Positions 14,037 through 62,407 of a DNA stretch of 64,000 nucleotides are shown piece by piece; position 1 is the first letter of the stretch, and each line of letters starts with the position of its first letter. Both the position numbers and the translations under genes were made by a program. Below the pieces are notes generated by a model that did not search any database, had not been told where the DNA came from, and saw only the letters and a program-made list of their open reading frames with translations. The stretch covers positions 19,220,001 through 19,284,000 of the forward strand of contig NC_043017.1 of the NCBI RefSeq assembly GCF_006345805.1. The letters are read 5' to 3'. This DNA comes from Octopus sinensis (lineage: Eukaryota).

Positions 14037-15323
14037 CAACCTTATGATCTTGAGCTGAATGCCCCTAACCACTCAGCCACATGTCAGCATGGATAATCAA
14101 ATGGTAAAAACAAACAACAGTGAAGACGGTGATACTGATAACAACTCCAACGACAACAATGACTATGACAATAATGATGATGATGATGATGTGGGGGAGG
14201 AGGAAGAGAAGGAAGATTACTTAACAGAGAAAACAAAGACTGTGAGAGCTACAGAAACTGCACACCTGAAGGAGATTTTTTTAGAGGTAGACATAGCTTC
14301 ATAACAATATGGCATGCAGCAATTAAAGTCTTCATATCTGATACTGTTTTTTTTTGTTTTGTTTAGTTTTGTCATTTACTTTAATGGTATTACTTTGACC
14401 TGGTTAAACAAGATGTACCTGGCTTAATGAGTCAACTGACACCTGACAGGTATTTATTATTTGTTTTAGAAGATGGCTGTGTTGTTATTGGTTATGAAGT
14501 TTACTTTGAGTTCATGTGGTTTTGGGTTCAATCCCATTGTGTGGCATTTTGAACGAGTGTCTTCTACTTTAGCCCAGGGACAATCAAAGCCTTGTGAGTG
14601 GATTTGGTAGACAGAAACTGAAAGAAGCCCATATATAGATGTGTGTGTTTGTGTGTGTATCTGTCTATCTTGTCCTGTGATGGTTTACGGTGGTGAGCTG
14701 GCAGAATTGTTAGCATGCCGATCGAAATGCTTTGCAGTATTTCATCTGTCTGTACGTTCTGAGTTCAAATTCTGCCGAGGTCAACTTTGACTTTCATCCT
14801 TTGACAGGGTCGATAAATTAAGTACCAGTGAAAACACTGGGGTCAATGTAATCAACTAGTCCCCTCCCCCCCCACATTTGAGACCTCATGTGATGGTTTT
14901 TAAACAAGCTTTCCCTATTATACAAGTAATGTCCTTTGCCTCCAATCTTCCATGAGAAAAAACACCTGGTCAAGGAAATCAGTGAGGGTTGGCAACAGAA
15001 AGGGCATCCCGTCATAGTAAAGCTATGTTAACCCTTTCAATATTGTATTCAATATTGTATTTATTTTGAGATGCTCTGTGTTACTTTCAGTTACTTAAAT
15101 ATAACAAAGAATTTAGTAAAATAACTTGGTTATCATTCAGCTAGTGTTAGGAACATAGATTGTGACTGAGGTTTGGTGGAAGATTCTAATTCAAAACTTA
15201 TGAAAGCAAGACATTTGTACTCAGAGCCAAAGCTGATTTCAGCCGGGTTAGTAACAAAAGGGTTCATGGATTGTCTGACCCATGCAAGCATGGAAAAATG
15301 GTCATTAAAATGATGATGAAGTT

Positions 15324-31982: not shown

Positions 31983-32420
31983 ATCATCATCATCATTCAA
32001 CGTCCGCTTTCCATGCTAGCATGGGTTGGACGGTTCAACTGGGGTCTGGGGAGCCCGAACGCTGCACCAGGCCAGTCAGATCTGGCAGTGTTTCTACAGC
32101 TGGATGCCCTTCCTAACGCCAACCACTCCGAGAGTGTAGTGGGTGATTTTATGTGCCACCGACACAGGTGCCAGACGAGGCTGGCGAACGGCCACGCTCA
32201 GATGGTGTTTTTTTTTTTTGTGCCACCGACACAGGTGCCAGACGAGGCTGGCAGACGGCCAGGCTCGGATGGTGTTTTTATGTGCCACCAACACAGGTGC
32301 CAGATGAGGCTGGCGAACGGCCACGATCGGATGGTGTTTGTTACGTGCCCCCAGCACGGAGGCCAGTCGATGCGGTACTGGCTACGGCCACGTTCGGATG
32401 GTTTTCTTGTATGCCACCGG
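31983..32420 (-). mobile_element. Family C copy with internal ~60-bp tandem repeats (right member of the inverted pair)
   Basis: Reverse complement of 30743-31023 over 31983-32259; the GTGCCACCGACACAGGTGCCAGACGAGGCTGG-like unit occurs three times. Confidence 0.85.
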
Positions 32421-32839: not shown

Positions 32840-32878
32840 TCATGTATTTCTATTGAATTGTTTGTTTGTTTCTTTCAG

Positions 32879-33350
32879 AGAATTAGATTCTGGTCTTGAA
32901 GAAGCCATTGCAAGCCTGATATGGGTGACACCTCGACTTCAGAGTGACATTCAAGAATTCAAACAGATCTCTGAACAGTTTGGAGCAAAATATGGCAAGG
33001 AATTCGCACAAGCATGTCGGACAAACGCACTTAATAATGTCAGCGAGAAAGTGATGCACAAACTCAGCGTGCAGGCACCGCCTAAAATTTTAGTGGAACG
33101 GTACATGATTGAGATTGCTAAGACATACAATGTACCATTTGTTCCGGATGCTTCAGTAATGGCACAGTTTGAAGAAGGTTGCTCCGTAGACAATTTGATT
33201 GACTTTGACTTAAGCCACCCAGACATGGACAAGAACGACAAAATGTTTGGTCGGCCAGGCGGAAACATATCTGGTGGCAGTGGTGGTGGCGGTGGTGGCT
33301 CGACGATTCCTCCGGTTCAATCCTGTGGATCTCCTTTCAATTATCCTGCC
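32879..33350 (+). CDS. IST1: IST1 homolog (ESCRT-III-associated factor), penultimate coding exon
   Basis: Acceptor tttcag at 32873-32878, donor gtaagt at 33351. Encodes ELDSGLEEAIASLIWVTPRLQSDIQEFKQISEQFGAKYGKEFAQACRTN...KLSVQAPPKILVERYMIEIAKTYNVPF, which I recognise as the IST1 core (vertebrate ELDSGLAESVSTLIWAAPRLQSEV...KLSVEAPPKILVERYLIEIAKNYNVPY). Confidence 0.97.
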
Positions 33351-33902: not shown

Positions 33903-34166
33903 GCATCGATATCTGCTGCTAATCAAAATGTCCCATCTGGAATTCCAACAAAGCCCTCAGAAAACAAGTACCCACCAGCACCTATCGGCTTTGTCATCAA
34001 TCAACCTAACCAACCAAAGCAAGTCGATATGTTCCCAGACTTACCAGCTGTTCCTTCAAACACTCTTCCAGACATTGGTAACCATGCGTCTGTACAAGAA
34101 TCAGGTGAAGATGTGGATTTTGATGATCTCACCAGACGATTTGAGGAACTGAAAAAGAAAAAATAA
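33903..34166 (+). CDS. IST1: IST1 homolog, terminal coding exon
   Basis: Acceptor cacag ends at 33902; phase 0 matches the previous donor. Contains FPDLPAVPSNTLP and the C-terminal DFDDLTRRFEELKKKK-stop, the two IST1 MIT-interacting motifs. Confidence 0.97.
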   Translation, partial: ASISAANQNVPSGIPTKPSENKYPPAPIGFVINQPNQPKQVDMFPDLPAVPSNTLPDIGNHASVQESGEDVDFDDLTRRFEELKKKK

Positions 34167-43929: not shown

Positions 43930-45452
43930 ACTTACAGTTTTATTGATAACAATAAGGGTCTCAACAACAATCTACAGACACAGCAGCCAAATCTCCCTCA
44001 AATCTCTAATCACTATCTTAATCCTTTTGTTACCATATTTTTCCGAAATACACTAATTTTATTCCAGTTAATTTGTAAAATAATGAAGAGTTTAGTATGT
44101 TATTAATCTGATATTTAGAACATGAAATTTAGATGACACTGCATCCTTTAAGGCCCTCATGCTTTCCGAAATCCACTGAAACTACACCTGATTATATATA
44201 GACTTTAGATGAGTTGTAGTGCACCTGAGCACTGTACACAATTATTATTATTATTATATGGAAGGTTTTAAGTTAGATCCCTTTAAAGCAAGGAGTTTTG
44301 TATCGTAGTACCAGGGCTGGTGGTCTCAGTTGGATTAGTATCAAAAAGTTTAAGCTGGTGTTCAAACTTTATAAACATATCCAACCCATGGCAAGGAAAA
44401 CAGAAGAATTATAGGGATTCAATCTGTATTTTGTTTTATCATTAATAACAAAAGAGAGATTTCAACAATTACAACTACAAATATAGTAGCTAAATCTGCC
44501 TCGAATTCCAACTTGATGTATTAAATCTTTTTTTTACCATATTTCTTTTAAACAAACTGTCTTAGTTTCAATTCGTTTTGAAAATCATGAAGAATTTAAT
44601 AAAATAACTTTGTCAAAATTTAGTTGGAATCTGGAAAAAAACTCAACATGAAATTTTGATGGCTGATTTTAATTTAAATCCCTTTAAAACAGGAAGTCTG
44701 TATCATAACACCAGAGGTGGTCTCCGTTGGATTGGTACCAAAAGGTTTAAGAGAATTTTCAAACTTTTTTAACTTGTCCAACCCCATAGTGAGGAAGAAA
44801 GAAAACCTATATAAATGTAATCTGTGTTTTGTTTTCTCATTAATAACAAGCGATCCCAATAATAACATTCTTCAAACATAGCAGTCAAATCTCCCTCAAA
44901 TTCTAACTTACTATCTTAACCCTACAGTTAGCATATTTCTGTTGAAATACACTGTCTTTATTTCAATTAATTATAGAAAATAACGAAGAATTTAATTTAA
45001 TAACTTTGCCGTTATTAAGCTGGAGTTTAGAATAAAAATTAACACGAAATTTTGATGGAAGGTTTCTATAGAGATCACTTGAAAACAGGAAATTTATATC
45101 AAAGAACCAGGAGAAGTCTCAAGCAAGTTGGTACCAAAATCCTTAAGCTGATAAGTTGGAAGGCAGGGAACCACAGATCTGGTTCAACTGTTTGCCATTC
45201 TTAAAAAGCAAAGACGGATCCACTTAACTATTTTGTAATATTTCTGTTGAAATACTGTTCTTATTTCAATTAATTATGAAAAATAGTGAAGAATTTAATA
45301 AAATAACTTTGTCATTATTTAATCTGGTCTTTTGAATATAAATCAACATGAAATTTTGATGGAAGGTTTTAAGATAGACCACTTTTTAAAGCAGAAAGTT
45401 TGTATCACAGCACCAGGGGTGATCTGAGGTGGGTTGGTGTCAAAATGGTTAA
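43930..45452. repeat. Old tandem array of a composite unit (spacer plus P2-like MITE)
   Basis: Four related MITE copies (~44020, 44530, 44915, 45230); the first three are preceded by a shared AATAACAA...CAAATCTCCCTCAAAT-like spacer. Confidence 0.65.
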
Positions 45453-47344
45453 CCCCACAACAGACGGGCATCTTGTTCAGGAGAGATGAATGTTCAAACT
45501 AAATATTTTGAAAATTCAAACAAGTTTAACAGCAGTAGTTTACTTGTCTACCTTGAACTGTGTTGTTTGAAGGATATTTGGCTGCTATTTCTAAGCAGGT
45601 TGAGTGACCACATAGAGGGTCATTTAGCAGTGATGGTGGTGGAAGAGGAGGAGGAAGCTGTGCATCTTGGTAAGTAAGTTTTTGCCAATCAATGAGGTGG
45701 TCTTTTGGATGTGGTCCAGAATTTTTATGTATGTTGTAGAAATATCAGACCAGGTATACAGGAACAGGTGGGATGATGGTGGGGAGTTGGCAGACATGTC
45801 AAAGGCATTGGATGAAATATTTTGTAGTATTTATATTTTGGCTTCTTTCATTCTGAGTTCAAATCCCACCAAGGTTAGCTTTTGCTTTTTGTCCTCCTGG
45901 GGTTGATACATAAAATACCAGTCTAAGGTTGTGGAATTGTTAACAAACTGGACCAGGTGCCTTGTGGTATTTATTCTGGTCCCTTGCATTATGAGTTCAA
46001 ATCTCTCTCTGTGACCTGCCGGGGAGTGATAGACTGAACCCACTCCCTTGTTTCATACCATCATCACAACCTGGCAGCCCAGGGTGCCTGTTACAGAAGT
46101 AGTGGAAGAGGCTGAGAGATGAGACGGCACATCTGTAGAGCAGAGGTTGGAGTGACTTTATACCAGTCGGTTGGGTGGCCTTTTGCCACCCAATCTCAAT
46201 GTGATTTGCACTCAAGTGATGTGATGCAACCAAATACCACAAGGTATCTTTTATTATCTGACACAGCCATAGGTGCATGTGGACGCCTATATGTATATAT
46301 AAACACACACATAAATATATATATATATATGTATAAAAATACATACATGCATATATATATATTTAGCAGAAGCAACAGAGTGACTGAAGGGCACTTAGAT
46401 AAGTGCCAATGCATGAAACCCTCAGACCTTGAGTCACTTTTACAAGGCTCTGCACAGGCGTTTTTACGTGACATCACATGGGCGCTTTTATGTGGCACCA
46501 CCATGCTTTACACTACAAGAAAGATCAGTTTTAACACTTCTGCTGTGGTGTATATGTATATATATGTGTGTGTGTGATGGCAGTTCTTTGTAGTCCAAAG
46601 ACCATGAGAAAGAGTAGCAAGTCCTTATGTTGCTACGTAAACCAACCCCTGAGTAACAGGCACTGTTGCATCTGGGGGTAAACACTTAAGTTTTAGTTAG
46701 ATGGAGGTTGTGATGATGGCTTTTCTGCCTCATATGGTAGACACCCCCATTGCATGTTCACCAAATTTTTACAGATGTAGTTTTTCATGCTACGAAAATC
46801 ATAACGTAATTCATCTGTTGAATCAGTATTACATTGTGGCAATTATACTTAAGCGTATTTGATGGGCGGGCTTCTATACAGGTTTGGGTTGACTCAAGTC
46901 TATTGACATGCAGAAGGACCAAAGCCAGGACTTCATGGTTGCAAAGGAAACCTTTTTTACCATCTGGCTATGCCAGCGTGCATGTGTGTGTATATGCAAA
47001 CATGCATGGGTTAGTCGGGAGTTCTACTTTGAAATCGTAAACAAAATAAGTTTGAAAATTCTAATTAGTTTACGAGTTAAATTAATTATCTTTGGTTTCA
47101 GTCTGAAAATATCTTTCTCCCCAAAAATGAAACGGGGACAAAAAGGAAGATCGTGGCAAACTATTTAAAACCTGACTTAAAAAGCGACTATTTTTGACGC
47201 GTCCTTCTTATCACAGCAACAAAATCGACAGCAAACTGGTAAAAAAAAAAAAAAAGAAACTTGTTTTTTAATAAGGAATAAAATACACGAATCATAAGTA
47301 CAAAAAGGTTTAAATTAAATTATAATTTATGCTACAAATTTTGA

Positions 47345-48397
47345 TTATAAACTCTTTTTTTCTGTGGTTGAAAGTTCTTCGAAAACACTTTTCCCCGTGG
47401 TAGAAATTTCTTCGGAAACTGGTTTTTCACTGGTCGAAGGCTCATTGCAATCGTGTTTTTCTGTTGCAAGATCATCCTCCCAAACGTTTTTTTCCGTGGT
47501 AAAAATTTCCTGACAAACGACTTTTTCTTCGGTAGAAAGTTTCTCACAAATCCGTTTTTCTGTAGTAGAAAATTCCTTGTAACCGAATGTTGAAGTGGTA
47601 GGAATTTCTTCGCTAACGTTTTTCTCATTGGTAGGAAGTTTATTACAAAAATATTTTTCGTCAGTATAAAGTTCTCCACAATCGGATTTTTCAGTGGCAT
47701 AAAGTTCTTCGTAAATGTTCTTTTCATCTGTAGAAAGTTCTTTGCAAACGGTTTTTTCCATTGAATAAAATTCTTCGCAATCGTTTTCTTCAGAGGCAGG
47801 AAGTTCATCGCCAATTTTTTCGGTGGGAGAAAGTCTCTCAGATTCTTGTTTTTCACTGGAAGAAAGATCCTGACAAACATCTTTTTCACTAGGAGAAAAT
47901 TCTTCTAAAATAATGTCTTTTTCTGTGATAGAATTTTCATCACAATCGGTTTTTTCACTGATAGGAAATTCCTTACAGTTAATATTTTCCGTTGAAAGTT
48001 CGTCGCAAGCGTTTTTTCCACTGACAGATAATTCCATGCCAGCAGTATTTTTCAAGGAAAGTTCTTTGCAAATTTGGTAAATTCTCATAGTAGAATGTAA
48101 ATTCAAATTTCTTTCTTTTTCATATTTTTTTAAGGTATATTTTTGACGAATATTGTGTATTTTACACTCCAGATCGTAGATGTCATTAAGACAATTGTAA
48201 ATTTTGCGCGCTGAAGGCGAATTATTGGGTAATTTAACGTCCATTCTCAAAGGTGCAGTTTTTTCACGTAAGCGCTTATTTTTATCAATTAGTTCTTGTT
48301 TTTGTTGGCGTAATCTCTCGTGGATATTTAATAATAAGTCTAATTTACGTCGGTAAGTTTCTTTCTCTGTTGAAATTTTCGAATTCTCCAGTTCCAT
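47345..48397 (-). CDS. Uncharacterised intronless 350-aa protein: predicted coiled-coil N-terminus plus 22 x ~11-aa acidic Cys/Ser/Thr repeats
   Basis: Uninterrupted 1053-bp ORF from ATG (48397) to TAA (47345) in AT-rich DNA where other long ORFs are microsatellite artefacts. The track start at 48601 is a TTG. Repeat units are highly diverged at DNA level yet keep the frame and the E-L-S-T-x-E-K pattern. No homolog recognised. Confidence 0.75.
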   Translation of the reverse strand: MELENSKISTEKETYRRKLDLLLNIHERLRQQKQELIDKNKRLREKTAPLRMDVKLPNNSPSARKIYNCLNDIYDLECKIHNIRQKYTLKKYEKERNLNLHSTMRIYQICKELSLKNTAGMELSVSGKNACDELSTENINCKEFPISEKTDCDENSITEKDIILEEFSPSEKDVCQDLSSSEKQESERLSPTEKIGDELPASEENDCEEFYSMEKTVCKELSTDEKNIYEELYATEKSDCGELYTDEKYFCNKLPTNEKNVSEEIPTTSTFGYKEFSTTEKRICEKLSTEEKVVCQEIFTTEKNVWEDDLATEKHDCNEPSTSEKPVSEEISTTGKSVFEELSTTEKKSL

Positions 48398-48399
48398 AG

Positions 48400-49900
48400 T
48401 GCCGAACCAAGATGATACAAGTCTACGGAAACATGGAAGAAAATCAATGAAGTTTGAGAAAATCTGTGATGGTACGCATCTGCCTGAAACTATCCACAAA
48501 ATATGTATTACACGTGAGTGTTGATCAGAACGATAAGTTTTCGGTAAGTGCTTGACAAAAAGGGATAATACAAAGACATTTAGAGTTACCTCCCTTATCA
48601 ATAATTAAACAGGAAAGAAAATTGAGTGCCGGACCTCAAATCCGGCTTTCAAAACCCCGGAACTTCCAGAAATCCGATAATACCGTGCAATATCACGCAA
48701 CTTACTGTACCCTGTATTAAATAAACAGGACCTGTTGTAGAAGTTTGTTCATTTGCTTACGGAATGTTAACAATAGTTTAGATTTAATGTGGATTGATAA
48801 ACATTAAACATACTCTGCTTTAGAAGCGTATTAGTTTGTATCTGTTAAATAAAATCATGTTCTTTACTTTTCTTCCATTTAATTTTCCTTTTGTAAGCTT
48901 TTATACACGGTACAATATGATATATAAAAAAATAATAACTGGTTTAATAGATATCAAACGGATCCTGCGTTAGATGTATATTTATTTGAATGTGTTAAAT
49001 GCAATTTAGTTCTTTACTTTCCTAGTTTATTTCATATTTTACATTTATATTTAGACTTTCCAGAAACCAGGAAATAAAATTCTTTACTACCCACAAGGGG
49101 CTAAACACAGAGGGGACAAACAAGGACAGACAAACGGATTAAGTCGATTATATCGACCTCAGTGCGAAACTGGTACTTAATTTATTGACCCCGAAAGGAT
49201 GAAAGGCAAGAGAAATATAGGCCACTTCCGGTCAGAAGCTTGTCGGATATTTGGTGGGGTTCTATGTATATCTCGATATATATTAGAATTTGTGACTTAT
49301 TTATCTGCAGTTTTCCACATATTCTATTTAATTCTTGGTGGGTTTCCGAATATAACAATAGAAAGACACTTTTATAGGGAGGAAAAAAAATTGTAAATAA
49401 GTTGTTTTATTATCTTCTATTTTAAAGAGTTATTAAAGGAAGTTTCGACAATCCTTTGAAAATTACTCTGTATAAATGGAAACTTTTTCTCTTTATATTT
49501 CGAAGGCTAAAGTTTTTTTGAATCAATCTACGCAATTCCTATTAAACTAGGACGTGCATAGGGTCTCGAAAAGAAACTTTCGGAGCACGTGTGTGACGTA
49601 AGAGGCAGGCAACGATATGCAGGCTTTTAGAGTTACTTCCCTTATACTAAAAGTACCCCAAGAAGGAAATATAAATATCTAATATTAATATAGAAAAATC
49701 TAATTTATAAATATATAATATCTAGTAGAGAGAAAGATAAGAGGATCAAGTTAAATAGATCAAGGCAAATCAACTGCAAAGCACATTGCGTTATCTGGTA
49801 AGACAGAAAACTCGAAAAACTCAGGTAAACAAACCGTTCGGATTATCGGTTAAGGCTAAGTTGAACGGATATTTCCTTGGTATCCGGCATTCCGTAAATC
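48400..49900. promoter_or_regulatory. Candidate bidirectional promoter between the repeat-protein ORF (-) and BORCS5 (+)
   Basis: CpG-retaining DNA. ETS-type ACTTCCGG at 49224-49231 and TGACGTAA near 49594. Duplicated 20-mer at 48579-48598 and 49626-49645. Candidate + strand donors at 49798 (gtaaga), 49825 (gtaaac) and 50391 (gtaagt). Confidence 0.5.
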
Positions 49901-51034
49901 CAAGAGTATCCAAGGAATTATATATATTTATACTTATGTACAAGAATTTATAACTGTTGTTTATTTGATCTATTTCATATGTTTTCGCTAATTACGGACG
50001 TGATTGCTACTGGAAGTACTCTTTTATGCGAAGAGTACGAAAATGTACCTCAATGAGTTGTTTACACAAACTGTTGTTGATTTCATAACTTCTATTTTAG
50101 AGAGTAATTAATGGAGGCTTCAAGAATCATCTGATAGTGACTGTGTGTATATACACACACACATATATATAGTTACCGTGTATATATAAATTTATATATA
50201 TATAGTAACTGTGTGTGTATATACAATTACTCTATATTTATATATATATAAATAAGTATATTTAGTTACTGTGTGTATATATAGATATAGTTTTACTGCA
50301 TGTGTGTATAAGTTACTCTGTGTATGTATATATATACATATATATAGTTATTCTATTTGTATTTTAAAGACTAAAGGTGTATTTGTTTCGGTAAGTATTT
50401 ACTTCTTGATATTTAACGTTATCATAATATCCATATAATTAACTTCATTATTTGAGTCTAATTATTGTCTGTCCTTCATTTAGTCATTTGGTGATGACGC
50501 ACTTTCACACAACAAATCCTTCATTTCGCTATATTTCTATATTTTACCAAAGGTTCTTAAAATAACGAATTAGGGTTGGTTATGAAAAATATTTTACTTT
50601 GGGAAATATCTTGGTTTTGTAATTTTTATGCAAAAAAAACAAAAAAACTCAAAATTTCCTAACGGTGTTATTTACATCACGTTGTCGACTTCAACGCGGA
50701 ACACAAGGCCAAATGTACAAAGAACGAACAAAACGTTTCTACTTTTCTCCACTAAATGCTGTTATTATTATTTTAATCATTCCTTCATTGTCCATCTTCC
50801 TTAAATTGTGAAATTCATTGATGTAGTCTGTTATATTTTTTTGCAACTCAAGTAACCTCAGCCCATTTGGGATAATCACCTCTCGTAAATTCCACCCTAT
50901 TTAGAATTTCAAATATAAATAATATGACATTGGTGTAAGTTTTGTAAATAGAATAATCACATATTTCAGATTTCGTAAGCACTGTCTAACTAAATATTTA
51001 ATTTTAATCCCAGCGCGTTTGAATTTCAAATATA

Positions 51035-51167
51035 ATTGTTACACATTCATATCTATGTGTATACGTAGGTATACGTGTGTAGAATACATCCCCACTTTTG
51101 GCACAGGTCGTACTGTTTACTAATAAAATAGTGCCAAACGTATACACAGATATGAATGTGTAACAAT
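51035..51167. repeat. Small inverted-repeat (MITE-like) element, ~30-bp arms
   Basis: ATTGTTACACATTCATATCTATGTGTATACGT...ACGTATACACAGATATGAATGTGTAACAAT (one 2-nt indel), plus an inner TTTGGCAC/GTGCCAAA pair. Confidence 0.8.
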
Positions 51168-52752
51168 AATGGTTTCTGATTTCGGCAGAAGACCAGTAAA
51201 TTTCAGGTGAGTGGGGCTAGTCGACACCATAGATCCCATTACTTGATTGGTACTTTATTTTATATCGACTCCGAGAGAATTTAAAACAAAGTGGACCCGA
51301 GTAAGATCTGAGGTCAGAATGCAACGAGTCGGAACATATACAGCAAAGCGTTTTTTCTGATGCTCTAACGATGCTGTCAGCTCCACAAAACTTCTATATA
51401 TTCTATATATCAGAATAGTTGATATATTTTTTGGCATTCCTTCAGGGTTGGTCTACAGAGGGTCAGTGTAAAGAGACGACGTCATTCACCCTCTTTTTCA
51501 GCCCAACCTCTTTATCCATGTCATGAGGGAATGTTGTATGGGGAGGATGACGACGTGTACCAATATCGAAGGATTGCCATTTTCTGTGACCACTGAGTAA
51601 GCATTATCAGTAAATATTTGAAGTATATACCTATTTCTTTATTACCCACAAGGGGCTAAACACAGAAGGGACAAACAAGGACAGACAAATGGATTAAGTC
51701 GATTATATCGACCCCAGTGCATAGCTGGTACTTATTTAATCGACGCCGAAAGGATGAAAGGCAAAGTCGACCTCGGTGGAATTTGAACTCAGAATGTAGC
51801 GTCAGACGAAATACCGCTAAGCATTTCGCCAGGCGTGCTAACTTTTCTGCCAGCTCACTGCCTTTTGAAGTATATACCACCATGCCCCCCCCCCGCCCAA
51901 TTAGTTCATGTTTTAATACTAATTTGAATTATAAAAATTAATCTGCAACATCAGGTTCTTTGGTATAGACTGTTATGTCGTCTTCCAGTGATTGTTTTAG
52001 CGATCTCAGAAGGCTGAATTGTAAAGTAGGTATGGAGAGGATTTGAACTTGGAATGTAAATGCATAAACGAACCACAAATTATTATTTTCCAATACTCGG
52101 CCATCTACTTGCTTACCTATCAAAAAATTTATCCCAGACGCTGTTCATGTACCTAAAATAACAGTTTTCAGACACCATAGTCTTCGGTAGCAATTCTCGT
52201 TTGATTATTGTTTAAGAGTTGATTACAAATGGCTCCTTGCATAGCTCACCTTATTCTCAGTATACCTTGGGCTATTTTTTCCTGCTCTTTTACATTTTGA
52301 GTTTAACTCCTTCCAATGTAGACTTTTCCTTTCATTCGTTCAGGCTCGGTAATAGAAAATATTGGCCAAGCACTGGGATCAATGTAATTAACTTTCTCCT
52401 CACAAAATTGTCAGCTATGTGCATAAATTATTGCTAAGATGGTAAACTGGCAGAAATGCTAATCATCAGACAATAAGGCTTTAGCAGCATTTGTTCTGGC
52501 TCTATATGTTGCGAGTTCAAATCCCACACGGGTCAGCTTGTCTTTCATCCTTTTGCAATTGAATGCTGGGGTTGATGTAATCAACTTACACATTCATCTG
52601 AAAAGTTGCTGGCCTTGTAGCAAAATTTGAAACTAATATTATTATTATTGTTATAATAAAACATCTGACTAGTTACTGTTTGTAAAAAGAAAAATGTAAT
52701 TATGTATATTTGTCATTTACATTTTTTTTTCTTTCTGAATTTAGGGAACTGG

Positions 52753-52867
52753 ATGGGCTCTGAACAAAGTAGCCTCCCAGCTGGTGCCCCAGGCAGCAGT
52801 CTGCGATCCCAGCGTGATGAAGACATTCCATATACAACATATTCAATAAGCAAACCCATCGATGGAG
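52753..52867 (+). CDS. BORCS5: BORCS5 (LOH12CR1/myrlysin), first coding exon
   Basis: Acceptor ttag at 52741-52744, ATG at 52753. Encodes MGSEQSSLPAGAPGSSLRSQRDEDIPYTTYSISKPIDG; MGSEQS is the myristoylated N-terminus of vertebrate BORCS5. Phase-1 donor gtaaag at 52868. Confidence 0.9.
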
Positions 52868-53940
52868 GTAAAGCATTTTCCATCATTGTATTATTATCAT
52901 CATCATCATCATCATTATTATTATTATTATTATGGCAGCAAGCTGGCTGAATCATTAGCATGCTGGGCAAAACGCTTAGCGGTATTTTGTCTGCTGTTAT
53001 GTTCTTAGTTCAAATTCTGCCAGGGTTGACTTTGCCTTTCATCCTTTCGGAGAGTCGATAAAATAAGTACCAGTCAAGTACTGGGGTTGATGTGATCAAC
53101 TTATCCCCTCCTCCAAGATTTCAGGCCTTTTCCCAACAGTTGAAAGGATTATTAATATTAAGGTGGTGAGCTGGCCGAATCGTTAGCACACTGGGTGAAA
53201 TGCTTAGCAGTATTTCATCCGCTGCTATGTTTTGAGTTCAAATTCCACCAAGGTAAACTTTGCCTTTCATCCTTTTGGGATCAATAAGTACCAGTGAAAC
53301 ACAGGGGTTGATAATCAACTAGACCCCTCCCCACAAATGGCTGCCCTTGTGGAAGATTTTGAAACTATTATTATTATTGGGATTAAGCAAAATGCTTTGT
53401 TATGCTTAGTTGTGTCTGTTTATGTTCCTGCTTCTCACCTGTCAGAGTTGATAAAAGAAGTATCGGGGAAATATTGCAGGGACATGCCATCAGTAATTAC
53501 TCAGGGTAGTCAGTTGGTGACCTTTATGTAGTAAAAACACACAAAAATAAACAAAACACAGGCACGTAACTGAGTTGAAGGCAGATTTACTTCTGCCTTT
53601 TATAATACGTAAAGAAAACGTTGCTGTAGGAATGTACACAGCACATGTTGTACTACAGCAGTCCTATGTGTGGCTTAAATACTGAGATTGAAAGGCAGGG
53701 ACGAATTATGCCTACCTAATCTACAAAAAAAAAACATTTTGCATTTTATGCATAGTAGTCAGAGTAACCTTCATAATTTTATTGAATTAGGTGCATATTT
53801 TGCGATAAAAGGAAAATGTTGCTATCAATCTATTTTATTCAAGATAGGCACCTTGTCTACCTAGGCGGCACATCCCTGGAATATTGGATTGATTTAACAG
53901 ACTAGAACCATTCCTGTTAAGAAAAGAAACTAAACTAAGG

Positions 53941-57605: not shown

Positions 57606-57719
57606 AATAAGAACTGGCCTTGAAATCTTGAGTTATTCCTTTCTATAAGACAAACAAACTAAATACCAGTGATGAGGCTGAGTCGTTCATCATATGCTGT
57701 CACATGTTTTTACAAAGCA

Positions 57720-58107
57720 CCCCCTTTGCTTGCGAAGACATGTTGGGGCAAGCGAAATCGAAATCGAATTGAACCAGCCAGGATCCCTGGTCTGGTGGTA
57801 CGTAAAAAGCACTATCCGACTTGTGGCTGATGCCAGCGCCGCCTCGACTGGCTTCCGTGCCGGTGGCACATAAAATACACCAATCCGACCGTGTCCGTTG
57901 CCAGCCTCGCCTGGCACCTGTGCAGGTGGCACGTAAAAAGCACCCACTACACTCACGGAGTGATTGGCGTTAGGAAGGGCATCCAGCTGTAGAAACACTG
58001 CCAGATCAGACTGGAGCCTGGCGCAGCCTTCTGGCTTCCCAGATCCCCGGTCGAACCGTCCAACCCATGCCAGCATGGAGAACGGACGTTAAACGATGAT
58101 GATGATG
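57720..58107 (+). mobile_element. Family C element flanked by a ~111-bp direct repeat
   Basis: Family C core with (GAT)n tail; 57609-57719 is repeated at 58108-58219. Confidence 0.9.
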
Positions 58108-61926: not shown

Positions 61927-62261
61927 AGTCGCCACGATCTTCCCCTCGCTCTCTCAACAGACAGCGGCAGGTTCACAGGGGCGAACGTCAGAGTACACCG
62001 AAGCATGACATTGTAATTGTGGCTGAAGGTGGACCGCTACAGAAGGACCCTGATCCTGAACAGACCAAGCTGAATGCCATCCCTGTCTTTCAACCTGTGC
62101 TCAAGAGATCGATCAATGGGGGTCGAGGAGAAATGGAATACATTGACAAACTGGACCACCGCCAGGTGCTGTTGCTCTGTCTCCGTTACCAGCAGCACTT
62201 GAAGCAGTTGTCAGAAGCTGTTGCTTTTGATCAGAATGCTCTCTGTATCCGAGTTAAAGAG
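61927..62261 (+). CDS. BORCS5: BORCS5, second coding exon
   Basis: Acceptor ttttag at 61921-61926; phase 1 joins the exon ending at 52867 in frame (G|AG = Glu). Encodes SPRSSPRS...KHDIVIVAEGG...DPEQTKLNAIPVFQPVLK...[38 protein letters not shown] (vertebrate DIVVVAQG...DPDVIKLQEIPTFQPLLK...[38 protein letters not shown]). Donor gtaagt at 62262. Confidence 0.97.
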
Positions 62262-62407
62262 GTAAGTTTGGAGAGAGAGAGAGAGGGGAGTCGCAAAAAG
62301 AAATGGGAGGAGAGAGAGAGACTTTATAATTTGTTAGACTATAAGTGAAATCTGTGTGTGTGTGTGTGTGTGTAGTGGAGTAAGTTGTATATCTATAGTA
62401 TATATGT

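What the first reader, a model, noticed from the sequence alone, without database searches (positions are those of the whole stretch)
47345..48397. Orphan intronless gene encoding a coiled-coil head and 22 tandem 11-residue C-x-E-L-S-T-x-E-K repeats
Seen: a 350-codon ORF. Residues 1-109 are helix-like (ELENSKISTEKETYRRKLDLLLNIHERLRQQKQELIDKNKRLREK; LNDIYDLECKIHNIRQKY). Residues 110-349 (from 48070 downward) parse into 22 units, 18 of them exactly 11 aa, e.g. CKELSTDEKNI / YEELYATEKSD / CGELYTDEKYF / CNKLPTNEKNV / CEKLSTEEKVV / CQEIFTTEKNV / FEELSTTEKKS. Cys occupies position 1 in 12 units. All length variants are whole-codon indels, so the frame has survived heavy divergence. Inference: this suggests purifying selection on a lineage-specific protein. 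Established: S/T-x-x-E is the CK2 consensus, D/E-x-S/T the Polo-like kinase consensus, and S-pT the Polo-box docking core; these recur in many units. Hypothesis: a multisite phospho-scaffold or Cys-periodic metal-binding/cross-linking disordered tail on a dimerising coiled coil. I recognise no family with this repeat.
Basis: partly seen in the sequence, partly recalled or inferred. Interest (0 to 1): 0.75.

Follow-up and report, generated by a model that had tools for sequence, protein, structure and literature searches.

The report
Octopus orphan gene with 11-residue repeats
A 350-codon open reading frame in the Octopus sinensis genome really does encode a short helical head and 22 tandem 11-residue repeats; it looks like a genuine gene with no known relatives, but nothing here supports the proposed phospho-scaffold or cysteine-based function.

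Summary
Window 47345-48397 (-) is a 350-codon ORF. Residues 110-350 form 22 tandem units of a degenerate 33-nt repeat, 12 of them starting with Cys. The window is Octopus sinensis chromosome CM016879.1, and the public record calls exactly this single-exon CDS. It lies 4.36 kb from, and divergent to, BORCS5.

Frame 0 has no stops in the array, against 2.4-8.7 expected under three nulls (P = 0.012 to below 5e-5). All length variants are whole codons. No other copy of the unit occurs in the 64 kb. I therefore rate it a probable real coding gene.

The functional story is not supported. CK2 and Polo-type motifs occur at the frequency composition predicts (13 vs 13.1; 14 vs 13.2). Cys at position 1 is kept no better than an average site. 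Comparison between units gives pN/pS of 0.73, not significant. The conserved core is E3, a hydrophobic residue at 4, E8 and K9.

AlphaFold gives one confident helix (residues 2-50, with a leucine-zipper heptad pattern) and a low-confidence acidic tail.

No homolog turned up in Pfam, PDB or 1.84 billion representative proteins. Controls show those libraries hold no octopus proteomes, so orthology, dN/dS and expression remain untested. Interest is modest.

The parts
47345..48397 (-). Complete 350-codon CDS (ATG 48397-48395, TAA 47347-47345), called as a single-exon gene in the Octopus sinensis record
48260..48376 (-). Residues 8-46: leucine-zipper-like heptads. I8, Y15, L22, L29, L36 and L43 fall every 7th residue; L19, H26, K33 and N40 are offset by 4. 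It lies within a confident predicted helix.
   Evidence: sequence read directly; AlphaFold helix 2-50, pLDDT 88-91 over residues 10-40; hydrophobic moment peak at 102 degrees
48218..48259 (-). Residues 47-60: Pro-containing linker (TAPLRMDVKLPNNS), predicted non-helical
   Evidence: pLDDT <50 for residues 49-58
48071..48217 (-). Residues 61-109: second amphipathic helix of the basic head. The head as a whole has pI 9.75 and net charge +10.
   Evidence: helix 61-119, pLDDT 50-59
47348..48070 (-). Residues 110-350: 22 tandem units of a degenerate 33-nt repeat. The consensus is TGCGAAGAACTTTCTACCACTGAAAAAAACGTT, coding CEELSTTEKNV. The tail is acidic (pI 4.3, net -33) and predicted with low confidence. 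The conserved core is E3, a hydrophobic residue at 4 (L/F/I), E8 and K9.
48398..48601 (-). In-frame stop-free extension upstream of the ATG, with no ATG in it. It contains an acceptor-like polypyrimidine tract plus AG at 48423-48440, so a 5'UTR intron is possible but unverified.
   Evidence: read directly
47267..47272 (-). ATTAAA, a possible polyadenylation signal 73-78 nt after the stop codon (weak evidence: AT-rich context)
   Evidence: read directly
47332..47889 (-). Overlapping 185-codon ORF in the +1 frame of the same array (KNFLPxKK units). It is a by-product of the conserved GAAAAA core and shows no depletion of stops.
47001..52000 (.). CpG-undepleted domain (o/e 0.86-1.24 against a window mean of 0.46). 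It covers the ORF and the spacer up to about 0.7 kb before the divergent BORCS5 start (ATG 52753).

Best explanation
This is a real protein-coding gene of Octopus, restricted to some part of the cephalopods, and made of two parts. The first is a short basic head (residues 1-109) of two amphipathic helices. Its first helix has a leucine-zipper heptad pattern and most likely pairs two chains. The second is a 241-residue acidic tail created by expansion of a 33-bp minisatellite. The array is old: its units are about 60% identical to each other with no higher-order pattern. The reading frame has been kept open. Only four of the eleven positions (E3, hydrophobic 4, E8, K9) are retained above the average-site rate. 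The most likely mode of action is therefore a dimeric carrier of two long, flexible, polyanionic tails. Each tail would present about 20 copies of a short linear motif, E-[L/F/I]-[S/P/Y]-[T/S]-x-E-K, for multivalent low-affinity binding to a basic or motif-specific partner. Shown: the ORF, the repeat anatomy, stop avoidance, the charge dipole, the confident first helix, and the lack of any detectable family. Inferred: dimerisation, disorder of the tail, and multivalent binding. The partner, tissue and process are unknown.
For: The public record calls exactly this 350-aa CDS. It is the longest stop-free stretch in the window, 419 codons against a mean of 17. There are no stops in frame 0 of the array, against 8.7, 6.2 and 2.35 expected under three increasingly conservative nulls (P<5e-5, 0.0016, 0.012), whereas the +1 frame is not depleted. 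The only T at column 22 and the only A at column 3 each occur with a second change that avoids a stop. All four internal length variants are multiples of 3 nt. Conservation varies strongly between columns (chi2=110.7, df 32, P=1e-10) even though the units are equally, star-like, divergent. E3 is kept in 17/22 units, hydrophobic-4 in 19/22, E8 in 18/22 and K9 in 18/22, all above the 0.49 expectation. At codon 4 the first base varies (C/T/A) while the residue stays L/F/I. The start context is good (A at -3, G at +4). The head has pI 9.75 and the tail pI 4.3. AlphaFold gives helix 2-50 at pLDDT about 90 and a tail mostly below 50. No second copy of the unit occurs in the 64 kb, and no transposon domain or flanking terminal repeats were found.
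Against: No transcript, peptide or ortholog evidence could be obtained. Inter-unit pN/pS (0.73) does not differ from the other frames or from the permutation null. Third positions of GAA, GAA, AAA, CTT, TCT and GTT are as conserved as first and second positions. That fits codon preference or nucleotide-level constraint as well as protein selection. Head codons lack the usual G-rich first position. The ORF was chosen because it is open, which is ascertainment bias. Dimerisation and disorder rest on a single-sequence AlphaFold model (mean pLDDT 47, pTM 0.22) and on heptad reading only.
Confidence: 0.45

Rival explanations
1. It is not a functional protein. An old 33-bp minisatellite lies next to an A-rich unique stretch, happens to be open, and was picked up by an automatic gene predictor. 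Any transcript would be non-coding or noise.
For: Other arrays in this window also give long open frames: 246, 187 and 182 codons. A second frame of the same array is open for 185 codons. pN/pS between units is not significant. Conserved third positions suggest nucleotide-level conservation. No homolog was found anywhere. The head has weak three-base periodicity. A perfect 33-bp minisatellite ORF from an unrelated genome (P0004) shows that such artefacts are called as proteins.
Against: The units are only about 60% identical, yet frame 0 has no stops under all three nulls. All indels are whole codons. The array is fused in frame to a 109-codon unique head with a good start context. The head's first helix has six consecutive hydrophobic residues at 7-residue spacing.
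Confidence: 0.3
2. The tail is a multisite CK2/Polo phospho-scaffold, or a Cys-periodic metal-binding or cross-linking tail, on a dimerising coiled coil.
For: The tail is rich in S, T and E (12%, 10% and 20%). S[ST] and [ST]xE are slightly over composition (10 vs 6.0 and 15 vs 10.1, each P about 0.05). A coiled-coil head is plausible.
Against: CK2 [ST]xx[DE] occurs 13 times against 13.1 expected, [DE]x[ST] 14 against 13.2, and S[ST]P never. S5 and T6 are kept no better than average (13/22 each). Cys1 is kept in 12/20 units, no better than average, and is replaced by S, Y, F, W or L. Cys is only 5% of the tail and has no CxC or CC clusters.
Confidence: 0.1
3. The 11-residue repeats form a 3-11 amphipathic helix that binds membranes or lipid droplets, or protects against desiccation, as in perilipins, apolipoproteins, alpha-synuclein or group 3 LEA proteins.
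For: The 11-residue period is strict. Hydrophobic residues fall at positions 11, 1 and 4, which lie on one helical face. The hydrophobic moment shows a secondary peak at 98 degrees (0.47-0.52). AlphaFold draws helices over parts of the tail.
Against: The dominant harmonic is 66 degrees (0.97), not 98-100. There are eight Pro residues in the tail and a high S/T content. Tail pLDDT is mostly below 50. No Pfam hit was found to perilipin, apolipoprotein, synuclein or LEA families. A net charge of -33 is unfavourable for binding anionic membranes.
Confidence: 0.07
4. The ORF is the large terminal exon of a longer spliced gene, or carries an upstream coding exon, so the 350-aa model is incomplete.
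For: The frame stays open for 68 codons upstream of the ATG, and an acceptor-like tract ending in AG lies at 48423-48440.
Against: The record's model starts at ATG 48397. That ATG has a good context. No conserved exon was recognised in 48.6-52.7 kb.
Confidence: 0.08

Closest known systems
Nopp140 (NOLC1) and treacle (TCOF1): repeat-built CK2 phospho-scaffolds (from established knowledge)
   Same: A small N-terminal self-association element is followed by many tandem, charged, low-complexity repeats that act multivalently. The composition is acidic and S/T-rich.
   Different: Those proteins have runs of Ser flanked by Asp/Glu, alternating with Lys/Pro/Ala blocks. Here CK2-type sites are no commoner than composition predicts, there is no LisH motif or Pfam hit, and the unit is a fixed 11-mer with an E-hydrophobic...E-K core.
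Involucrin, trichohyalin and other fused-type cornified-envelope proteins (from established knowledge)
   Same: A short head plus a long tail of short, lineage-specific, charged tandem repeats. The whole coding sequence lies in a single exon, and the repeats arose by minisatellite-like expansion.
   Different: Those are vertebrate proteins, Gln/Lys-rich for transglutaminase cross-linking, and some have an S100 EF-hand head. Here the tail is poor in Gln, no S100 domain is present, and no homology was found.
11-mer amphipathic-helix repeat proteins (perilipins, apolipoproteins A/E, alpha-synuclein, group 3 LEA; from established knowledge)
   Same: An exact 11-residue period and a charged Glu/Lys-rich composition.
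   Different: The amphipathic signal at about 98-100 degrees is weak, Pro and S/T are frequent, the net charge is strongly negative, and there is no family match.
P0001 (UniParc UPI0004EA9D07): Ig-domain protein with about 20 IKELPTKNKSI repeats, the best database hit
   Same: An 11-residue unit sharing E3, L4, T6 and K9 with this array. Individual units are close (CNKLPTNEKNV here, INKLPTKNKII there). phmmer E=3.8e-13.
   Different: The match is confined to the repeats, is 31% identical and is inflated by repetition. The architecture differs (Ig domains, hydrophobic C-terminal segment) and the repeats are basic rather than acidic. The source organism is unknown and no DNA is on record. It is probably convergence of low-complexity sequence.

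Membership tests
Any curated protein family (Pfam-A) or solved structure | Significant profile or sequence match | tested here: not met
   The best Pfam E-value is 0.0063 (WhiA_N, 17 bits, below its 23.4 cutoff). PDB gives nothing below E=0.7 for the whole protein, the head alone or a 3-unit profile.
CK2/Polo multisite phospho-scaffold (Nopp140/treacle-like) | Kinase consensus sites enriched beyond amino-acid composition | tested here: not met
   [ST]xx[DE] 13 against a shuffle mean of 13.1; [DE]x[ST] 14 against 13.2; [DE]x[ST]-hydrophobic 4; S[ST]P 0.
CK2/Polo multisite phospho-scaffold (Nopp140/treacle-like) | Actual phosphorylation of the repeats | not testable with these tools
   Needs phosphoproteomics or in vitro kinase assays.
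Cys-periodic metal-binding or cross-linking proteins (metallothionein-like, sperm-tail Cys-repeat proteins) | High Cys content with CxC/CC clusters, and Cys conserved above other positions | tested here: not met
   Cys is 5% of the tail, occurs once per 11 residues at most, and is retained in 12/20 units (P=0.22 against the average-site expectation). It is replaced by S, Y, F, W or L.
11-mer amphipathic helix repeat proteins (perilipin, apolipoprotein, synuclein, LEA group 3) | 11-residue periodicity | tested here: met
   Autocorrelation is 0.31, 0.28 and 0.32 at lags 11, 22 and 33.
11-mer amphipathic helix repeat proteins (perilipin, apolipoprotein, synuclein, LEA group 3) | Dominant amphipathic moment near 98-100 degrees, helix-compatible sequence, and a family profile match | tested here: not met
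   The moment is 0.97 at 66 degrees against 0.47-0.52 at 98 degrees. There are 8 Pro residues. Tail pLDDT is mostly below 50. No Pfam match.
bZIP transcription factors | Leucine heptads | tested here: met
   Y15, L22, L29, L36 and L43 fall at 7-residue spacing, with N40 at an 'a' position.
bZIP transcription factors | Basic DNA-binding region immediately N-terminal to the zipper; bZIP profile match | tested here: not met
   Residues 1-14 (MELENSKISTEKET) are acidic to neutral. There is no bZIP Pfam hit at E up to 10.
Transposon-borne or dispersed-repeat ORF | Multiple dispersed copies, a transposon protein domain, and terminal repeats | tested here: inconclusive
   No other unit copy occurs in the 64 kb (maximum 8.5 bits against 12-37 in the array). 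No TE domain. No LTR or TIR flanks the ORF. The rest of the genome could not be searched.
Taxonomically restricted (orphan) gene | No homolog outside a narrow clade, but intact orthologs within it | tested here: inconclusive
   No homolog of the head was found among 1.84 billion representatives, or in a cephalopod-like ENA assembly, ERZ21867824, that does carry IST1 and BORCS5. Octopus proteomes are absent from the libraries, so the within-clade half is untested.

The most novel reading that the evidence does not exclude
This is a cephalopod- or octopod-restricted gene born from a 33-bp minisatellite and kept under selection. Its product is a zipper-dimerised, polyanionic scaffold that displays about 20 copies per chain of a previously undescribed linear motif (E-hydrophobic-S/P-T-x-E-K). 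The gene sits in its own germline-unmethylated domain shared with the BORCS5 promoter region.
Probability: 0.3. Interest if true: 0.45.

Novelty: new member of a known kind. Interest (0 to 1): 0.3.

Why it matters
If orthologs and expression confirm it, this would be a clean example of a taxon-restricted animal gene assembled from a minisatellite plus a coiled-coil head. It would have a defined four-residue conserved core that could be used to look for a binding partner. That is useful for studies of gene birth and of cephalopod-specific biology, but it does not bear on a long-standing open question. Many eukaryotic genomes carry such repeat-built, disordered, lineage-specific proteins. In practical terms, the kinase-site and Cys-periodicity arguments do not survive simple composition controls, so they should not guide experiments.

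Tried and rejected
1. Homology searches found no family. I tried Pfam, PDB with the whole protein, the head alone and a 3-unit profile, the word-indexed 5.8-billion search, the exhaustive 1.84-billion search and a JGI metagenome scan.

2. The four weak exhaustive-search hits were rejected as homologs.
   - P0002 is a chiton mucin-like protein and P0003 is a bacterial-type ASTGSKEVANQ repeat.
   - P0004 is a near-perfect 33-bp minisatellite in an unrelated 42% GC genome, with no DNA similarity to this window.
   - P0001 matches in the repeats only, and its source could not be traced.

3. I tried to reach syntenic DNA of a relative through neighbouring genes. The only cephalopod-like source in the collections is ENA sample ERZ21867824, with 74-79% exon identity. 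Its BORCS5 and IST1 pieces lie on separate contigs, and the 10-kb flanks hold no relative of the ORF. BORCS5 exon 1 was not reached either, so this is uninformative.

4. The exact-sequence look-up found only the source chromosome. The protein is not in the 15-billion-protein collection.

5. No 3-unit or other higher-order repeat exists: identity is flat at 0.59-0.63 for lags 1-10.

6. Inter-unit pN/pS was not discriminating as a test of selection.

7. Two literature searches found nothing on this gene or motif.

8. My first column-shuffle run mishandled gapped units (second part). I repeated it on gap-free units.

9. I did not run a fold search, because the model confidence (mean pLDDT 47) would make the matches meaningless.
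Full report
**Source and context**

An exact-sequence look-up places the 350-aa product on Octopus sinensis assembly GCA_006345805.1, chromosome CM016879.1. There it is called as a gene of exactly 1053 nt, that is, a single coding exon.

The nearest called gene carries PF10158 (LOH1CR12, i.e. BORCS5). Its first exon starts at window 52753 on the + strand and reads MGSEQSS.... A second exon lies at about 62007-62268. The two genes are therefore divergent, with 4.36 kb between their ATGs. IST1 exons lie at 32847-33166 and 33969-34166 on the + strand.

**The observation**

The ORF at 47345-48397 (-) is present as described.
- ATG 48397 is the first ATG in a 419-codon stop-free stretch. That is by far the longest in the window; the mean stretch is 17 codons, and the next longest (246 codons) is a simple repeat.
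- The start context is good: A at -3 and G at +4.
- From residue 110 (48070) the protein shows sharp 11-residue periodicity, with autocorrelation of 0.31, 0.28 and 0.32 at lags 11, 22 and 33.
- TRF reports a 33-nt period with 62% matches.
- I parse 22 units of 30, 33 or 36 nt. Seventeen are exactly 11 residues, and 12 start with Cys.

**Is it more than a chance-open minisatellite?**

The units are about 60% identical to one another, with no dependence on distance and no higher-order repeat. The array is therefore old and has not been recently homogenised.

Starting from the consensus (TGCGAAGAACTTTCTACCACTGAAAAAAACGTT, coding CEELSTTEKNV), I compared observed stops in frame 0 (none) with three nulls:

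| Null model | Expected stops, frame 0 | P(0 stops) |
|---|---|---|
| Uniform divergence at the observed 27% | 8.7 | <5e-5 |
| Observed per-column rates with a pooled mutation spectrum | 6.2 | 0.0016 |
| Exact column composition, bases shuffled among 19 gap-free units | 2.35 | 0.012 |

The +1 frame carries a 185-codon ORF but is not depleted: it has 2 stops against 1.6-4.4 expected. Its openness is a by-product of the conserved GAAAAA core.

Two details point the same way. The only T at column 22 comes with the only C at column 23, giving TCA rather than TAA. The only A at column 3 comes with a T at column 2, giving TTA rather than TGA. All four internal length variants are multiples of three.

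Conservation also varies strongly by column (chi2=110.7, df 32, P=1e-10), which neutral decay of a star-like array does not predict.

I conclude that the frame has probably been maintained by selection. The ascertainment caveat applies, because the ORF was noticed for being open.

**What is not shown**

Comparison between units gives pN/pS of 0.73 in the annotated frame, against 0.77 and 0.87 in the other two. That lies inside a column-permutation null, with 33% of permutations lower.

Third positions of the conserved codons (GAA, GAA, AAA, CTT, TCT, GTT) are themselves 82-95% conserved. Part of the conservation may therefore be codon preference or a constraint at the nucleotide level. I cannot explain this.

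The most variable columns include the two consensus CpG sites (columns 3/4 and 30/31), where transitions dominate.

**Which residues matter**

| Position | Retained | P vs 0.49 average-codon expectation |
|---|---|---|
| E3 | 17/22 | 0.0065 |
| Hydrophobic 4 (L/F/I) | 19/22 | 0.0003 |
| E8 | 18/22 | 0.0016 |
| K9 | 18/22 | 0.0016 |
| Cys1 | 12/20 | 0.22 |
| S5 | 13/22 | 0.23 |
| S/T6 | 13/22 | 0.23 |

- At codon 4 the first base varies (C 12, T 5, A 4) while the residue stays L, F or I. This is the clearest protein-level signature.
- The last three positions are retained no better than average.
- Cys is replaced by single-step neighbours (S, Y, F, W).

- CK2-type [ST]xx[DE] sites number 13, against 13.1 ± 2.8 in composition shuffles.
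- [DE]x[ST] sites number 14, against 13.2.
- S[ST]P is absent.
- Only S[ST] (10 vs 6.0) and [ST]xE (15 vs 10.1) are marginally high. TEK (7 vs 0.5) merely restates the repeat.
- Cys is 5% of the tail, with no CxC or CC clusters.

Neither the phospho-scaffold idea nor the Cys-periodic idea gains support.

**Physical character**

- The head (residues 1-109) is basic: pI 9.75, net charge +10.
- The tail is acidic: pI 4.3, net charge -33. It is 20% Glu, 12% Ser, 11% Lys and 10% Thr.
- Single-sequence AlphaFold gives helix 2-50 with pLDDT about 88-91 over residues 10-40. Helix 61-119 has pLDDT 50-59, and the tail is mostly below 50. Mean pLDDT is 47 and pTM 0.22.
- I8, Y15, L22, L29, L36 and L43 fall at exact 7-residue spacing, with L19, H26, K33 and N40 four residues after. 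This is a leucine-zipper pattern with an Asn at an 'a' position.
- There is no basic region N-terminal to the zipper and no bZIP profile hit.
- The tail's strongest hydrophobic harmonic is 66 degrees (0.97), not the 98-100 degrees of an amphipathic 3-11 helix (0.47-0.52). It also contains 8 Pro residues. A perilipin, apolipoprotein or LEA-type helix is therefore not favoured.

**Relatives**

There are no significant Pfam or PDB matches. The 5.8-billion word search found nothing.

The exhaustive search of 1.84 billion representatives returned four hits, all confined to the repeats:
- an Ig-domain protein of unknown source with IKELPTKNKSI 11-mers (E=3.8e-13, 31% identity);
- a chiton mucin-like protein;
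- a bacterial-type repeat protein;
- a translated perfect minisatellite from an unrelated genome.

Nothing matches the head.

Control searches change how this negative result should be read. The BORCS5 and IST1 exons of this same window find best hits of only 67% (one 89% partial) and 83% identity. The libraries therefore contain no octopus proteomes or transcriptomes. The protein itself is also absent from the 15-billion collection.

The only cephalopod-like source is ENA sample ERZ21867824. It carries IST1 and BORCS5 on separate contigs, at 74-79% exon identity, and shows no relative of the ORF in the reachable flanks.

So the gene has no detectable relative outside cephalopods. Whether it is conserved among octopuses could not be tested.

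**Mobile-element check**

A position matrix of the 33-nt unit finds no other copy in the 64 kb: the maximum is 8.5 bits, against 12-37 within the array. No LTR or TIR pair brackets the ORF. The surrounding repeats are tRNA-derived SINE-like fragments and microsatellites. Genome-wide copy number is untested.

**Epigenomic context (seen in passing)**

CpG observed/expected is 0.46 for the window, and 0.12-0.6 in most 1-kb bins. In every bin from 47001 to 52000 it is 0.86-1.24. This domain begins at the 3' end of the ORF and ends about 0.7 kb before the BORCS5 ATG.

In mosaic-methylated invertebrate genomes (established knowledge), this pattern marks DNA that is unmethylated in the germline. That is typical of promoters and of tissue-restricted rather than housekeeping genes. 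It fits a discrete transcription unit next to the BORCS5 promoter region, but it does not prove one.

**Verdict**

The feature is real and is probably a genuine, taxonomically restricted coding gene. It combines a zipper-type coiled-coil head with a minisatellite-derived, acidic, probably disordered tail whose conserved core is E-hydrophobic-x-x-x-E-K.

The most likely mode of action is a dimeric, multivalent polyanionic scaffold. This is an inference, and I give the overall explanation a confidence of about 0.45. The main rival, an annotation artefact over an open minisatellite, stands at about 0.3.

The decisive tests are orthologs with dN/dS, RNA-seq and proteomics, and all need resources not available here. 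Interest is modest at 0.3.

Noticed in passing
window 47001-52000: This is the only long CpG-undepleted stretch in the window (o/e 0.86-1.24 per kb against a window mean of 0.46). It is not GC-rich. It spans the ORF and the spacer up to just before the divergent BORCS5 start, which suggests a germline-unmethylated domain.
   Followed up: partly
window 47332-47889 (-): A second open frame (185 codons, KNFLPxKK units) overlaps the repeat array in the +1 frame. Its stops are not depleted relative to the nulls, so it is a by-product of the conserved GAAAAA core.
   Followed up: yes
window 47348-48070 (-), columns 9, 12, 15, 24, 27, 33 of the 33-nt unit: Third codon positions of the conserved codons (GAA, CTT, TCT, GAA, AAA, GTT) are 82-95% conserved, although several are four-fold or two-fold degenerate. 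Protein-level selection alone does not explain this.
   Followed up: partly
window 52753-52869 (+) and about 61990-62268 (+): These are BORCS5 (LOH1CR12/myrlysin) exon 1 (MGSEQSS..., a myristoylation-type start) and exon 2. The gene continues beyond the window end. Its body is CpG-depleted.
   Followed up: partly
window 32847-33166 and 33969-34166 (+): These are IST1 (ESCRT-III-associated) exons, including the C-terminal DVDFDDLTRRFEELKKKK MIM-type end. A 67-bp tandem repeat (32142-32418) lies just upstream in the same gene region.
   Followed up: no
window 45836-45881, 45972-46003, 51757-51796, 52494-52539; 49080-49209 vs 51635-51764: Several fragments contain the tRNA T-arm-like motif GAGTTCAAATCCCAC. 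There is also a 130-nt direct repeat pair at 92% identity. These are probably tRNA-derived SINE copies. ARAGORN finds no intact tRNA gene in the window.
   Followed up: partly
window 32142-32418 (+), 57690-58076 (-), about 15133-15300 (-): A dispersed repeat family shares a translated 'MLAWVGRF...[19 protein letters not shown]' segment. At 32.1-32.4 kb it includes 67-bp tandem sub-repeats. It looks like an octopus interspersed element.
   Followed up: no
window 44028-45385: A tandem repeat with a 396-bp unit, about 2-3 copies at about 74% identity, lies 2 kb downstream of the ORF.
   Followed up: no
window 48628-48646 (-): A perfect 6-bp hairpin (GCCGGA-N7-TCCGGC) and a GGAAGTTCC palindrome sit 230-270 nt upstream of the ATG, in a locally CpG-rich patch. 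This is a possible promoter element, untested.
   Followed up: no
L002 and L004 (ENA ERZ21867824 contigs ctg102731l, ctg84880l): An ENA 'metagenome' assembly contains cephalopod-like nuclear contigs. They carry BORCS5 and IST1 exons at 74-79% nucleotide identity, with the same TA/CA microsatellite texture. This looks like host DNA assembled as metagenome.
   Followed up: partly
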